Shown: in pieces, positions 48,049 through 57,226 of the stretch | How positions within the stretch are numbered: position 1 is the stretch's first letter | Layout of the letters: every line of letters starts with the position of its first letter | DNA from: Aplysia californica | Taxonomy: Eukaryota | Assembly: GCF_000002075.1 (NCBI RefSeq) | Contig: NW_004797934.1 | Coordinates: 391,787 to 453,876, forward strand | Reading direction: 5' to 3' | Length of the DNA stretch: 62,090 nucleotides | Program-made: the position numbers and the translations under genes | Notes under the pieces: generated by a model | What the model was told of the DNA's origin: nothing | The model's database searches: none | What the model saw: the letters and a program-made list of their open reading frames with translations, nothing else

Positions 48049-50541
48049 CTACGAGCCGTTAAGAAACACTACATGGGTGGGGGAACAACGAGATTCCCTA
48101 AATACAATCAGTTTAGATTTTTTGAAAGTTTTACAACATTTGCAACACAATTAGATTGCATAAGTGCCAAAAATCAAAGGTTTTAGTTTTAGTAAGAGTT
48201 TTATGGCACTTGCAACACAATTAAGTTGTATCAGTGTTGAAGATTAGAGGTGTTTCTAGAGAGTAGCATAAAAAGGAAATTCAAAAGGAGAGATAAAGAT
48301 GACTAGATGTTTGATAGGAAAGAAGGAGCAAGCCCCACCAGATCGCCTGCCAACCACCCACAATGCTAGTCATTTAGTGCTTGGGAGGGTGTATATACAG
48401 ACACAAAAAAAGAGGGAAAGTATAGAAGTTTGTAATACATTTTACATTAAATAAAAAGTTATCAAAATGGGAATTTAAAATAAAAACAAATATTTCCAAA
48501 TCAAAATATTGATGTTGTTTCTGAAAGTCTGAACCAGAATAGTTTGAGCGTTTATAAAGTCGAGCCACCGATATGACACATACAGCTTGTCAGAGCCAAC
48601 AGGAACAGCCCGTCAGCTCATCGTAGTAAATAGGTTGGTATAAAACAGTTCAGCCTAAGCTACTGCCAGCAGCAGACCCCGTGAACCCAACTGCTCCGAT
48701 GTACTAAGCCGAACATTTTGAACGTTTAAAAAAAATTTGTGCAGTTTTTCTATCTGTGGTATCGGTTGCATTTGCCCTAAATATGGAGAGGGAAAAAAAA
48801 CGAGAAAAGATACATGCTACAGATGAAGGAATTCAGTTTTTTTCTCTTTCCTGCAAAATTTTTCTTTCTGAGCTTAAAACAGTTAAACAGCTTCCTGTCC
48901 AAATTGTCAGTGTCACAAGCAACCCACTTAAGCACACTTTTTACACAAGAGACAAACCCCTCCCTCTAGTTTTTTTGGGGTATTATTCCTACCAGGAATA
49001 ATAAAAAGGGGGAAAAATTGTAAGCCTTGACCGTAGCATTAAACTGCATTTTGGTGATGTTGAAAAGTGCATATTTGACAGAGCTGTGGTAGGTAGTAAA
49101 AGTAAAAATTCTCAAAATCTGGACTTAAACGGATAGCTTGCGACAAGAGGTGAATATATATCCACCTCCCCTCTGTGGGAATCCCCAGTGACAACCCAAG
49201 CTTTCACTGGTGCCATCTCGTGCGTAGAGTCACCGGATCAATAACTCAGGAGATCGTATTAACGTTAGTTATTTTATAGCCAGAGGGGTTTCTTTTTTTT
49301 TTCTCCATGGCTGTCCAGATCGAGTTTCACAACCATAGTAAGTCGATGATAGATTGTCAGCCTGGCTCAAGTAAGGTTGGCTGAAACGACGGTGTGCCTT
49401 GCCCATTACCACAGAGAAATCTTTTTTGGGGAAAAAGGCTCACATAAACTAAAAGAATGCAAGGGGAGTGGTGTTTTAGTAAGAGTTTTACAGCACTTGC
49501 AACACAAAAAGGTCAGTCATTTAAGAGACGAATATTAAAGGTGTTACAAGAGAGTAACAAAGACGAAAAAGGAGAAGAGATCAGAATAATAATAGATGTT
49601 TGATAGGGAAGAAAGAGCAAACCACACCAGAGTACCCACCAACCATCTGTCTGCCTGGATGGACTTTCACAACCATAGTAAGTCAATGATAAGAAGATTA
49701 TTAAGTCAATGACAGACTGTTAGCCTGACTTGAGTAAGGCCGTCTGAAATGACGATGTGTCCAGCCCATTAGTACAGAGAATCTTTTTTTAAATTGGAGG
49801 GGGGGNNNNNNNNNNNNNNNNNNNNNNNNNNNNNNNNNNNNNNNNNNNNNNNNNNNNNNNNNNNNNNNNNNNNNNNNNNNNNNNNNNNNNNNNNNNNNNN
49901 NNNNNNNNNNNNNNNNNNNNNNNNNNNNNNNNNNNNNNNNNNNNNNNNNNNNNNNNNNNNNNNNNNNNNNNNNNNNNNNNNNNNNNNNNNNNNNNNNNNN
50001 NNNNNNNNNNNNNNNNNNNNNNNNNNNNNNNNNNNNNNNNNNNNNNNNNNNNNNNNNNNNNNNNNNNNNNNNNNNNNNNNNNNNNNNNNNNNNNNNNNNN
50101 NNNNNNNNNNNNNNNNNNNNNNNNNNNNNNNNNNNNNNNNNNNNNNNNNNNNNNNNNNNNNNNNNNNNNNNNNNNNNNNNNNNNNNNNNNNNNNNNNNNN
50201 NNNNNNNNNNNNNNNNNNNNNNNNNNNNNNNNNNNNNNNNNNNNNNNNNNNNNNNNNNNNNNNNNNNNNNNNNNNNNNNNNNNNNNNNNNNNNNNNNNNN
50301 NNNNNNNNNNNNNNNNNNNNNNNNNNNNNNNNNNNNNNNNNNNNNNNNNNNNNNNNNNNNNNNNNNNNNNNNNNNNNNNNNNNNNNNNNNNNNNNNNNNN
50401 NNNNNNNNNNNNNNNNNNNNNNNNNNNNCCCCCCCCTTAAAAAAAACACGCCAAAAAAACCCCAAGTTCTGGGACTTGGAAGCAATAATTTAACATGCGA
50501 ACAGTATATTTCAAACATTCCATGCTGCTTGAAAAGGATAC
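48049..50541 (-). other. MAPK1: U12-type GT-AG intron
   Basis: 5'ss GTATCCTTTT; branch TTTCTTAAC (48058-48066) close to TAG; no pyrimidine tract. Confidence 0.85.
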
Positions 50542-50613
50542 AGTGTTTGCCGGGGAAGAGCGGTCGATTGGCCAACATCTCTGCCAGGATACATCCCACT
50601 GACCATACATCAA
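50542..50613 (-). CDS. MAPK1: ERK1/2 exon (72 nt)
   Basis: [23 protein letters not shown]. Confidence 0.95.
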
Positions 50614-54656: not shown

Positions 54657-54846
54657 CTTGAGATCACAAGTGGTGTTGAGGAGCAGGTTGCTGGGCTTGA
54701 GGTCGCGGTGCAGCACGTTGGCCGAGTGGATGTACTTGAGCCCTCGCAAGATCTGGTAGAGGAAGTAGCAGACGTGGTCGTTGCTCAGCTGCTGCGTCTT
54801 CAGGAGCTTGTACATGTCTGTCTCCATTAGACACTGCACAATGTAG
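54657..54846 (-). CDS. MAPK1: ERK1/2 catalytic-loop exon (190 nt)
   Basis: [15 protein letters not shown]...[18 protein letters not shown]. Confidence 0.97.
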
Positions 54847-57226
54847 CTGCACATATTTATTAAGGAAAAAAAAACAACACCACTCTCCACACTGACTGTT
54901 AAGTGTAAGACTCCTTGTTTGTTTAAGCATTTTACGGCGCCAGCAACACAATAAGGTCATATGAGTGCCGAAGATTAGAGGTGTTACTAGAGAGAAACAA
55001 ACACAAAAAAGGAGAGATTAAAACGATAGATATTTCACATGAAGGAAGGAGCAAATCACACCAGAGCACCCGTAAACTACCTACAGTAAAACTCCGCCAT
55101 ACACCATTCTAAAAAGTGATGGATGATGGAATCTTACACTAAGCAGTTGACATGAAAACCTCCAAGGCTTCCGATTGTTTTTAGCAAGAGTTTTACGGCA
55201 CTTGCAACATAAATAGGTCGTGTACAGTAAGTGCTGAGGATTAGAAATGTTAGTGCAAGAGAGTATTGCACAAACAAAAGGAGGAAAGATAAGAATGATA
55301 GATCTTTGATGGGAAAAAATTAGCAAGCCACACCAGAGCGCCCATCAACAACCCACAATCTTTCAAATTTCACTGTATCCTTGTTTGTCTGTTTGTTTGA
55401 GTAGAGAGAAGCAAATCGACAAAACAAAGTTGTTAAATTCTGGGAAAAATCTTCAAGACAGACAAAAGCAAATAATGGACAGAAAAGAGGTAGGACCAAT
55501 CAGTGGCACCCTCTAACCACCCGTGCCATGATTTCCAAAATTGCAGAACTGAAGGATTTTGGAGAAGCTGGATTTAGCGTCTCAGTGCACATGAACACCC
55601 CCCCCCCCCAAAAAAAACCCCAACAAAAAAACAAACCTAAAGACTTCAACCTCTGCAAACGCACTGTATAGAAAATGTATCCATCAGGTTCAAGTCATGT
55701 CCAAACCAGGCTATAAATAAAGGTCACAACTCATTTTTCTCAATTGTGTATTTTACCCTGTACTTTTCACATCATCATTTTGACTGCTCAGTGTAAGACT
55801 CTTTCACACATCACTTTTCATAATAAAATACTGTCGTAAGTTCACAAAACGCATTTTTATATTTTAGCGCCAAAATTTTTTGGGGGCTAAATCGAAAGCC
55901 TGATCAGTAACCCTACTGGTGCAAAAAAAAAATCAAATCAAATTGAAACTGTTACCAGTTTTTTTAATAAATTAGAATTTAAATTTCTAAAAGATTCTAT
56001 TCTTACATGATTATGCTGACAACAAATTTTTTTTTTTCGAAACTGCTCTGAAGAAGAAAAAAGAGTTTTGTCAGCTTACGGCAGAGTGGTGTATGGAGGA
56101 GTGTTACACAAAGAAGGGGATTTATTGCTTTGTTTGTCCATCAAATGGTGGAGATGGAAAGTGCCTATGAGAGAAGTATGAGCTCAACAGGTCATTACCC
56201 TAGAATTACAAAATTCTATCTGCTCAGTACCTAGTTTTCAGAAATTTGAAGTTAAAATTTTTATGTTCACAACATGTCGAGCTTTTTCAAATGCAATTCT
56301 TTGAATATCTTGATAATGACTTCAATAATTTAATGATTTTGATAGAACAGATAGTCTTAGTAACTCAAAAAGACCAAAAATGTCCAAAAAAAAACTTTGC
56401 AGTTGTAAGGTAGCAAGGTGTCACATTGTATGTCTCCTGGTATATTGACTATACAGTCTACCTTCTCGTCACTTCAAGATGAAAATATTTATTTAAAATC
56501 AAACACATATTTTTTACCGTTTTTAAAAACAACACAAAAAAACCTTTTTGTTCTCAGAATTTTCAACTTTTTAACAGGAAGATATTAAAGTTTTTTTTTT
56601 AAAGTATGAAAACTTATCTTCATAAACACTTATAAACTGAGAGGGAACTAAAAAAATTGGCAATTTGCAATTTGTGTGACATGGTGGAGAAATCAGGCAC
56701 TCGTCAAAATAATGACATTAAAGAAACCAACATTTGTCTGTCCATTGGGCAATTTTTATACTTTTTATTTTGTTTGCTCAACACCTTTTAGTTCCATTTA
56801 AATGTGGATTTTACTGAAAAACAATCAAATGCACAAAGTTGGTAAACATAAAAAGCAAGACTATAAAAAAAAAAACTTTGATATTATACCTCTACACAAA
56901 GTTAAAGATCTGTAATGCAGAGCAGTGTCAGTGCCGAACTGGCAACCAAACAAAAACCATCTGCTGCAAGCCTGCCCAATGCTCAAGGCATTTAGAAGGA
57001 AATACTGGCCCAACCCAAGGCAGAGAGACCCAAAACTCTATGGGGGCCTTGAGGACCTGCAGAGAACAGTAGCCTTCGCACTAGAGACTGGGATGTCCAT
57101 TTACAGATGAACAAGAAGAAGATAAGCCAAATAATTCCATACGTCCAAGAATTGACGAATGCCCGTTACCACCATGTTGCGACACATTCAGAATCTATAG
57201 CACAAGGTGAGCCACACAAAGGATAC
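54847..57226 (-). other. MAPK1: U12-type GT-AG intron
   Basis: 5'ss GTATCCTTTG; branch TTCCTTAAT (54859-54867) 12 nt before the exon. Confidence 0.9.

What the first reader, a model, noticed from the sequence alone, without database searches (positions are those of the whole stretch)
48049..57226. ERK gene with three minor-spliceosome (U12) introns, two flanking one 72-nt exon
Seen: three of eight visible introns begin GTATCCTT and have a TT(C/T)CTTRAY branch 9-12 nt before the exon, with no pyrimidine tract (54847-57226, 50614-53230, 48049-50541). Established, from memory: U12 introns are rare; vertebrate ERK1/2 keep one at the KDV|YIV position; JNK genes have a 72-nt DxWSVGC..FPG exon associated with U12 splice sites, whereas human ERK2 has no introns at those two positions. 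Inference: this gene may retain an ancestral MAPK intron pattern, making ERK output triply dependent on the minor spliceosome.
Basis: partly seen in the sequence, partly recalled or inferred. Interest (0 to 1): 0.8.

Follow-up and report, generated by a model that had tools for sequence, protein, structure and literature searches.

The report
ERK gene with three minor-class introns
A sea-slug-like mollusc's ERK kinase gene has three rare U12-type (minor-spliceosome) introns, two of them flanking one 72-base exon; four other invertebrate ERK genes share all three, so this is an old animal gene layout that vertebrates later simplified.

Summary
Each starts GTATCCTT(T/G) and carries TTCCTTAAT, TTCCTTGAC or TTTCTTAAC ending 12, 10 or 9 nt before an AG. 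The other six introns are ordinary U2-type. The assembly gap lies wholly inside intron 6, away from both splice sites. Exon order, strand and phase agree across it, but physical continuity is untested.

The genome encodes U11, U12 and U4atac snRNAs. The same three U12-type introns occur in ERK genes of Physella, Haliotis, Octopus and Branchiostoma. Nematostella and Acanthaster keep two. Capitella and a teleost keep one. Trichoplax has all three positions, the middle one U2-type. In this genome p38 and JNK share the positions but are U12-type only after the 72-nt exon.

No paper found describes this. I rate it a new variant of a known kind, of moderate interest.

The parts
46378..61536 (-). ERK1/2 (MAPK1/3) orthologue, coding part: 10 exons, 1113 nt, 370 codons plus stop
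   Evidence: Exon 4 matches PDB MAPK1 at E 7e-35 with about 95% identity. The TEY motif is in exon 5. The closest database protein is Physella acuta ERK, 92.5% identical over aligned exons.
57227..57282 (-). Exon 3 (56 nt), ends ..MKD + GT
54847..57226 (-). Intron 3, U12-type GT-AG, phase 2, at KD|V-YIV
   Evidence: The same position is U12-type in all ten ERK loci examined, including the teleost.
57218..57226 (-). Intron 3 5' splice site GTATCCTTT
54859..54867 (-). Intron 3 branch box TTCCTTAAT, ending 12 nt before the exon
54657..54846 (-). Exon 4 (190 nt)
53231..53363 (-). Exon 5 (133 nt): DFG to TEY to ..GYTKS
50614..53230 (-). Intron 5, U12-type GT-AG, phase 1, at YTKS|ID
   Evidence: U12-type at this position in Physella, Haliotis, Octopus and Branchiostoma. 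U2-type in Trichoplax ERK and in this genome's p38 and JNK. Absent in Nematostella, Acanthaster, Capitella and the fish.
53222..53230 (-). Intron 5 5' splice site GTATCCTTG
50624..50632 (-). Intron 5 branch box TTCCTTGAC, ending 10 nt before the exon
50542..50613 (-). Exon 6 (72 nt; (I)[23 protein letters not shown]), flanked on both sides by U12-type introns. Skipping it would stay in frame.
   Evidence: Single 100% copy in the genome.
48049..50541 (-). Intron 6, U12-type GT-AG, phase 1, at GKH|Y. Contains the assembly gap, so its length is uncertain.
   Evidence: The same position and phase is U12-type in this genome's p38 and JNK and in ERK of Physella, Haliotis, Octopus, Branchiostoma, Nematostella, Acanthaster and Trichoplax.
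50533..50541 (-). Intron 6 5' splice site GTATCCTTT
48058..48066 (-). Intron 6 branch box TTTCTTAAC, ending 9 nt before the exon
49806..50428 (.). Assembly gap (N) inside intron 6. Not filled and not looked up.
47969..48048 (-). Exon 7 (80 nt), starts (Y)LDQLNHILG

Best explanation
This is the single ERK1/2 gene of a heterobranch mollusc. The assembly size and scaffold count match my memory of the Aplysia californica AplCal3.0 assembly, but no tool showed this.

Three of its nine coding introns are U12-type GT-AG introns. They would be removed by the minor spliceosome: U11 pairs with GTATCCTT, and U12 pairs with the TCCTTRAY box 9-12 nt from the AG.

The layout is inherited, not new. The bilaterian ancestor's ERK most likely already had U12-type introns at KD|V, YTKS|ID and GKH|Y, the last two enclosing a 72-nt exon. 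Molluscs and amphioxus kept all three. Cnidarians and a sea star lost the middle one. An annelid lost two. Vertebrates lost two and now have U2 introns a few codons away.

The GKH|Y intron is the same intron that JNK and p38 genes still carry as their well-known U12 intron.

Inferred consequence, not shown: mature ERK mRNA needs three minor-spliceosome reactions. Because both flanks of exon 6 are U12-type, the intron 5 donor can in principle pair with the intron 6 acceptor. That would skip exon 6 in frame and remove the DxWSxG helix, giving an inactive kinase.
For: - Gene model and splice signals.
- Rarity of the motifs in the window.
- ERK identity.
- Minor snRNA genes in the same genome: U12 at 134 bits, U11 at 106 bits, U4atac at 91 bits. 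The U12 gene carries the GTAAGGAA box complementary to the three branch boxes, allowing G-U pairs.
- Exact protein-to-genome mapping of orthologues. At the three positions: Physella, Haliotis and Octopus are U12/U12/U12. Branchiostoma is U12/U12/U12-like. Trichoplax is U12-like/U2/U12-like. Nematostella and Acanthaster are U12/none/U12. Capitella and the teleost are U12/none/none.
- Same-genome p38 and JNK have a 72-nt exon with a U2 acceptor upstream, and downstream GTATCCTTT plus TCCTTGAC 9-11 nt from the AG, in the same phase.
- Vertebrate JNK has U2 upstream and U12 downstream of exon 6 (PMC1874599; PMC8329584).
- The peptide across both junctions ([33 protein letters not shown]) is identical to the Pinctada ERK entry held in UniProt and nr.
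- Mollusc minor-intron density is reported as the highest among animals (preprint 10.1101/2022.10.12.511939).
Against: - There is no RNA evidence from this organism.
- U6atac was not found, but only 45 of about 58,000 prefilter candidates were scored, so this says little.
- The intron 6 branch box (TTTCTTAAC) and the Branchiostoma and Trichoplax sites are weaker matches.
- No formal intronIC score was computed; classification rests on consensus matching.
- Ancestral-state inference uses ten ERK loci and parsimony plus the literature view that U12-to-U2 conversion is the usual direction. Several independent losses of intron 5 are required.
- Continuity across the gap in intron 6 is unproven.
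Confidence: 0.8

Rival explanations
1. Intron 5 (YTKS|ID) is not ancestral as a U12 intron. Either it was gained, or a U2 intron was converted to U12, independently in molluscs and in amphioxus. The ancestral ERK then had only two U12 introns.
For: Intron 5 is absent from ERK of Nematostella, Acanthaster, Capitella and the teleost. Where the position is occupied outside molluscs and amphioxus, it is U2-type: Trichoplax ERK and this genome's p38 and JNK.
Against: Position and phase are identical in two distant bilaterian phyla, with near-perfect U12 signals in all five genes. The reviews read here mention only conversion from U12 to U2. Trichoplax shows the position is older than Bilateria in ERK itself.
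Confidence: 0.12
2. The three introns are removed by the major spliceosome. The U12-like motifs are chance or relics without function.
For: All three are GT-AG. No RNA or knock-down data exist here. Intron 3 has a T-run near its 3' end.
Against: The donors lack G at -1 and at +5, so they would pair poorly with U1 (established knowledge of U1 pairing). The full 8-9 nt U12 donor plus a branch box at 9-12 nt recurs at the same three positions in five species. The minor snRNA genes are present.
Confidence: 0.04
3. Assembly artefact: the small contig carrying exon 6 is misplaced next to the gap, or the locus is a broken copy. The 'two U12 introns around one exon' picture would then not be real for this genome.
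For: A 623-N gap sits 113 nt from exon 6, with low-complexity letters at its edge.
Against: Exon order, strand and phase are right, and the CDS is open over 370 codons. Exons 4, 5 and 6 each have one 100% hit in the genome. Physella, Haliotis, Octopus and Branchiostoma show the same arrangement without gaps.
Confidence: 0.03

Closest known systems
The U12-type intron of vertebrate MAPK1/MAPK3 (ERK2/ERK1) at KD|V-YIV
   Same: Same position, phase 2, and GT-AG U12 signals. Confirmed in a teleost ERK locus: GTATCCTTA plus TCTTTAAC 10 nt from the AG. The 190-nt exon that follows is the same length.
   Different: In vertebrates it is the only U12 intron of the gene. Here it is one of three.
The U12-type intron after the 72-nt exon of JNK and p38 genes (MAPK8-14), including the JNK exon 6a/6b circuit
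   Same: Intron 6 has the same position and phase (after ..FPGxx, phase 1) and the same class. The exon in front is 72 nt and encodes DxWSVGC..FPG.
   Different: In JNK and p38 the intron upstream of that exon is U2-type. That mixed layout blocks skipping and, after exon duplication, gives mutually exclusive exons. In this ERK both flanks are U12-type and the exon is single. This intron has not been described for ERK in the papers I could search.
Human and mouse genes with two or three minor introns, and adjacent minor introns (Olthof et al. 2019, PMC6717393)
   Same: Genes with several U12 introns exist: 50 with two and 3 with three. A few minor introns are flanked by another minor intron; the paper counts 12 minor introns flanked by one major and one minor intron.
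   Different: ERK is not among the multi-U12 genes in vertebrates. Here the state is old and conserved in invertebrate ERK.

Membership tests
U12-type (minor-class) intron, GT-AG subtype | 5' splice site matches /RTATCCTT(T) | tested here: met
   GTATCCTTT, GTATCCTTG and GTATCCTTT at the three exon ends. The six other introns score 0-3 of 6 at +3..+8.
U12-type (minor-class) intron, GT-AG subtype | Branch box TCCTTRAY close to the 3' splice site (roughly 8-20 nt) | tested here: met
   TCCTTAAT (12 nt), TCCTTGAC (10 nt) and TTCTTAAC (9 nt; 7 of 8). All are complementary to the GTAAGGAA box of this genome's U12 gene, allowing G-U pairs.
U12-type (minor-class) intron, GT-AG subtype | No polypyrimidine tract between branch box and AG | tested here: met
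   The 9-12 nt spacers are AAATATGTGCAG, CATTGTCCAG and GGCTCGTAG. Intron 3 has a T-run upstream of, and merging into, its box.
U12-type (minor-class) intron, GT-AG subtype | Organism has the minor spliceosome | tested here: met
   U12 at 134 bits, U11 at 106 bits and U4atac at 91 bits, all above Rfam cut-offs. U6atac was not found, but the prefilter scored only 45 candidates.
U12-type (minor-class) intron, GT-AG subtype | Splicing depends on U11, U12 and U6atac | not testable with these tools
   Needs knock-down or suppressor-snRNA experiments.
U12-type (minor-class) intron, GT-AG subtype | Positional homology with accepted U12 introns | tested here: met
   Intron 3 corresponds to the teleost ERK U12 intron. 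Intron 6 corresponds to the JNK and p38 U12 intron. Intron 5 has U12 counterparts only in other invertebrate ERKs.
ERK1/2 (MAPK1/MAPK3) subfamily | Kinase core nearly identical to ERK1/2, with a TEY activation loop | tested here: met
   The best PDB matches of exon 4 are all MAPK1 or MAPK3, at E 7e-35. Exon 5 has ..[15 protein letters not shown]. The other MAPK-like loci in the genome are p38 (TGY), JNK (TPY), ERK5-like, ERK7-like and NLK-like.
JNK-type mutually exclusive 72-nt exon pair (6a/6b) | Two tandem copies of the 72-nt exon separated by a hybrid U12-donor/U2-acceptor intron | tested here: not met
   Only one WSVGC-coding exon lies between exons 5 and 7 of this ERK. The gap could hide sequence. 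This genome's JNK also has a single copy.

The most novel reading that the evidence does not exclude
The common ancestor of ERK, p38 and JNK already carried U12-type introns at all three shared positions. The well-known excess of minor introns in MAPK genes would then be the relic of one multi-U12 gene. In molluscs and amphioxus, ERK dosage would be gated three times by minor-spliceosome activity. One gate is a 72-nt exon defined by U12 sites on both sides, whose in-frame skipping would give a kinase-dead ERK. Because p38 stabilises U6atac in mammals, this would wire stress signalling to ERK output, for instance in Aplysia neurons where ERK is needed for long-term plasticity.
Probability: 0.2. 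Interest if true: 0.65.

Novelty: new variant of a known kind. Interest (0 to 1): 0.45.

Why it matters
MAPK genes are the textbook family enriched in minor introns, and their minor introns are reported as among the most conserved. Those studies start from human introns, so they miss U12 introns that vertebrates lost.

These data show three things:
- ERK once shared the JNK and p38 U12 intron.
- Invertebrate ERKs carry up to three U12 introns.
- Vertebrates replaced two of them with nearby U2 introns.

This gives a concrete, testable origin for the family-wide enrichment. It also offers a natural case of an exon bounded by two U12 introns, useful for studying exon definition by the minor spliceosome. 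The result is an evolutionary refinement, not a new mechanism.

Tried and rejected
- Own-species transcripts among database proteins: none. The fragments 100% identical in exon 4 diverge outside it, so they come from other species.
- The look-up of encoding contigs failed for the Acropora and Pomacea proteins and gave no DNA for P0026.
- U6atac: no hit, but this is uninformative.
- Loci on C1, C72 and C100 turned out to be CDK or CDKL genes, not MAPKs.
- The second p38 has a gap where the 72-nt exon should be.
- ATATCCTTT in the C1 gene is coding sequence (NILL), not a splice site.
- A second, JNK-like copy of exon 6 was sought and not found.
- Six literature searches plus one that failed found no description of three U12 introns in an ERK gene. 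A pan-eukaryotic intronIC survey did use Aplysia (PMC10639083), so the classification may sit unremarked in bulk data.
- The joined CDS was only counted (length, stops) in a local script. It was never printed or sent to a search tool.
- Human sequence was not examined.
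Full report
**1. What is there**

The finding lies on the minus strand. Open frames and exact anchors give a complete ERK gene. It has ten coding exons, in plus coordinates:

| Exon | Coordinates | Note |
|---|---|---|
| 1 | 61536-61394 | |
| 2 | 58564-58438 | |
| 3 | 57282-57227 | |
| 4 | 54846-54657 | |
| 5 | 53363-53231 | |
| 6 | 50613-50542 | 72 nt |
| 7 | 48048-47969 | |
| 8 | 47563-47485 | |
| 9 | 47042-46933 | |
| 10 | 46500-46378 | |

- The CDS is 1113 nt with one stop, at the end.
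- Exon 4 is about 95% identical to human and rat ERK2 in the PDB (E 7e-35). Exon 5 has the TEY loop.
- I joined the exons only inside a local script, to count length and stops.

**2. The observation**

- Donors are GTATCCTTT, GTATCCTTG and GTATCCTTT.
- Branch boxes TTCCTTAAT, TTCCTTGAC and TTTCTTAAC end 12, 10 and 9 nt before the AG.
- The other six introns begin GTAAGT, GTAAGT, GTGCAG, GTAAAG, GTCAGT and GTCAGA and have pyrimidine-rich ends.
- The window holds 7133 GT sites on both strands. Five are followed by ATCCTT, and three of those are these exon ends. TCCTTRAY occurs five times in all. Chance does not explain this.
- Two small corrections: there are nine coding introns, not eight, and intron 3 has a T-run that runs into its branch box.

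**3. The gap**

- The N run 49806-50428 is inside intron 6. It is 113 nt from the donor and 1757 nt from the acceptor.
- Exons 6 and 7 are in the expected order and strand. Both junctions are phase 1, and the split codon T|AC restores GKHYLDQ.
- Exon 6 has one perfect copy in the 927-Mb genome.
- Orthologues without gaps show the same layout.
- Continuity and intron length are still unproven. I did not fill or look up the N letters.

**4. The machinery is present**

- The genome has U12 (134 bits), U11 (106 bits) and U4atac (91 bits) genes.
- The U12 gene carries GTAAGGAA, which is complementary to the three branch boxes if G-U pairs are allowed.
- U6atac was not found, but only 45 of about 58,000 prefilter candidates were scored. 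This is not evidence of absence.

**5. Paralogues in the same genome**

- Searches with single exons found p38 (TGY), a second p38, JNK (TPY), ERK5-like, ERK7-like and NLK-like genes.
- p38 and JNK each have a 72-nt exon that encodes DIWSVGC..FPG.
- The intron before that exon is U2-type (donors GTGCCT and GTGAGG; pyrimidine tract plus CAG). It sits at the same codon and phase as ERK intron 5.
- The intron after that exon starts GTATCCTTT and has TCCTTGAC 9-11 nt from the AG. It sits at the same codon and phase as ERK intron 6.
- Both genes also have an intron at the KD|V-Y position, in phase 2, with a U2-type acceptor.
- This matches the published vertebrate JNK layout: U2 upstream and U12 downstream of exon 6 (PMC1874599; PMC8329584).

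**6. Orthologues**

I mapped nine annotated ERK proteins exactly onto their own genomic loci. The table gives the intron type at each of the three positions.

| Species | KD\|V | YTKS\|ID | GKH\|Y |
|---|---|---|---|
| This gene | U12 | U12 | U12 |
| Physella | U12 | U12 | U12 |
| Haliotis | U12 | U12 | U12 |
| Octopus | U12 | U12 | U12 |
| Branchiostoma | U12 | U12 | U12-like (GTATCCTCC) |
| Trichoplax | U12-like | U2 (GTACGT) | U12-like |
| Nematostella | U12 | none | U12 |
| Acanthaster | U12 | none | U12 |
| Capitella | U12 | none | none |
| Teleost (Sinocyclocheilus) | U12 | none | none |

- The teleost has U2 introns at NSK|G and NHIL|G instead. Its exon there is 115 nt, which equals 16 + 72 + 27.
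- None of the roughly 60 other introns in these loci passed both U12 criteria.
- The peptide across both junctions of exon 6 is identical to the Pinctada ERK entry held in UniProt and nr.

**7. Reading**

- The simplest history is that the bilaterian ancestor's ERK had three U12 introns.
- Intron 6 is the same intron that JNK and p38 kept. Intron 5 was then lost several times, and vertebrates lost introns 5 and 6.
- This rests on parsimony over ten loci and on the literature view that conversion runs from U12 to U2.
- The main rival is independent origin of a U12 intron 5 in molluscs and amphioxus. I give it about 0.12.

**8. How it likely works**

- U11/U12 would recognise each donor and branch box, and the minor spliceosome would remove the three introns. 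This step is inferred from sequence.
- The donors lack G at -1 and +5, so U1 should bind them poorly.
- Three slow, U6atac-limited steps could make ERK mRNA output sensitive to minor-spliceosome activity. This is inferred by analogy with mammalian work (PMC3728624, listed).
- Both flanks of exon 6 are U12-type, so skipping it is mechanistically allowed and in frame. In JNK and p38 the mixed flanks forbid it unless the acceptor is shared, as reported for MAPK12. None of this was tested here.

**9. Known or new**

- MAPK genes are known to be rich in minor introns (69% of human members, PMC6865273). Their minor introns are reported as the most conserved, and molluscs as the animals with the highest minor-intron density.
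- Human and mouse have 50 genes with two minor introns and 3 genes with three (PMC6717393).
- No paper I could search describes three U12 introns in ERK, or the ERK copy of the JNK and p38 intron.
- A pan-eukaryotic intronIC survey used Aplysia californica, so the calls may exist in bulk data.
- I rate this a new variant of a known kind, with interest 0.45.

**10. Limits**

- No intronIC score was computed.
- Human DNA was not examined.
- The organism's name is my inference. The assembly figures of 927,310,431 bp and 4332 scaffolds match my memory of AplCal3.0, and the closest protein is from Physella.
- The earlier scan notes returned for this window concern other genes and did not bear on this finding.

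Noticed in passing
window 53351-53562: A tandem repeat of period 77 (2-2.5 copies) duplicates the intron 4 acceptor region plus the first ~13 nt of exon 5. This creates a decoy 3' splice site (..TCATCGCTAG|ATTTGTGATTTTG) 77 nt upstream of the real one. Using it would shift the frame.
   Followed up: partly
window 47792-47843 vs 47939-47990: A 52-nt copy (87% identical) of the last 21 nt of exon 7 together with its GTAA donor lies 147 nt inside intron 7. It may be a pseudo-donor or the remnant of a local duplication.
   Followed up: partly
window 48097-58799 (e.g. 48225-48294, 50798-50867, 53984-54053, 54956-55025, 58730-58799): A SINE-like dispersed repeat has at least 8 copies in one orientation inside the ERK introns. 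Several copies lie within about 50-260 nt of acceptor sites, but the U12 branch boxes lie outside the repeat.
   Followed up: no
window 46744-46913: A long (GA)n microsatellite of about 85 units lies in intron 9, just after exon 9.
   Followed up: no
window 50429-50465: Low-complexity letters (C8, A8, A7, C4) sit right at the edge of the assembly gap and probably reflect poor read ends. They are intronic and away from the splice signals.
   Followed up: no
P0026 (ENA ERZ26052378, 863-kb contig; no DNA obtainable): In an unidentified relative (97% identical in exon 4), one uninterrupted 882-nt open frame carries the exon 3 and exon 4 peptides joined (..MKDVYIVQC..) between intron-like translations. 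The otherwise universal KD|V U12 intron seems precisely lost there.
   Followed up: partly
L048 (teleost ERK) 3893-4007: The vertebrate exon of 115 nt equals the 72-nt exon plus 16 nt upstream and 27 nt downstream. Two U12 introns were replaced by two U2 introns a few codons away, and how that happened is unexplained.
   Followed up: partly
L049/L050 (G000:C236:846000-865999), exon at 9479-9550: This genome's JNK has a single 72-nt exon, with no 6a/6b pair. The U2 acceptor and U12 donor arrangement is already in place.
   Followed up: yes
L023/L024 (G000:C515:300000-319999): A second p38-like gene lies about 90 kb from the first on the same scaffold. An N run of 1146 letters covers the place where its 72-nt exon should be.
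   Followed up: partly
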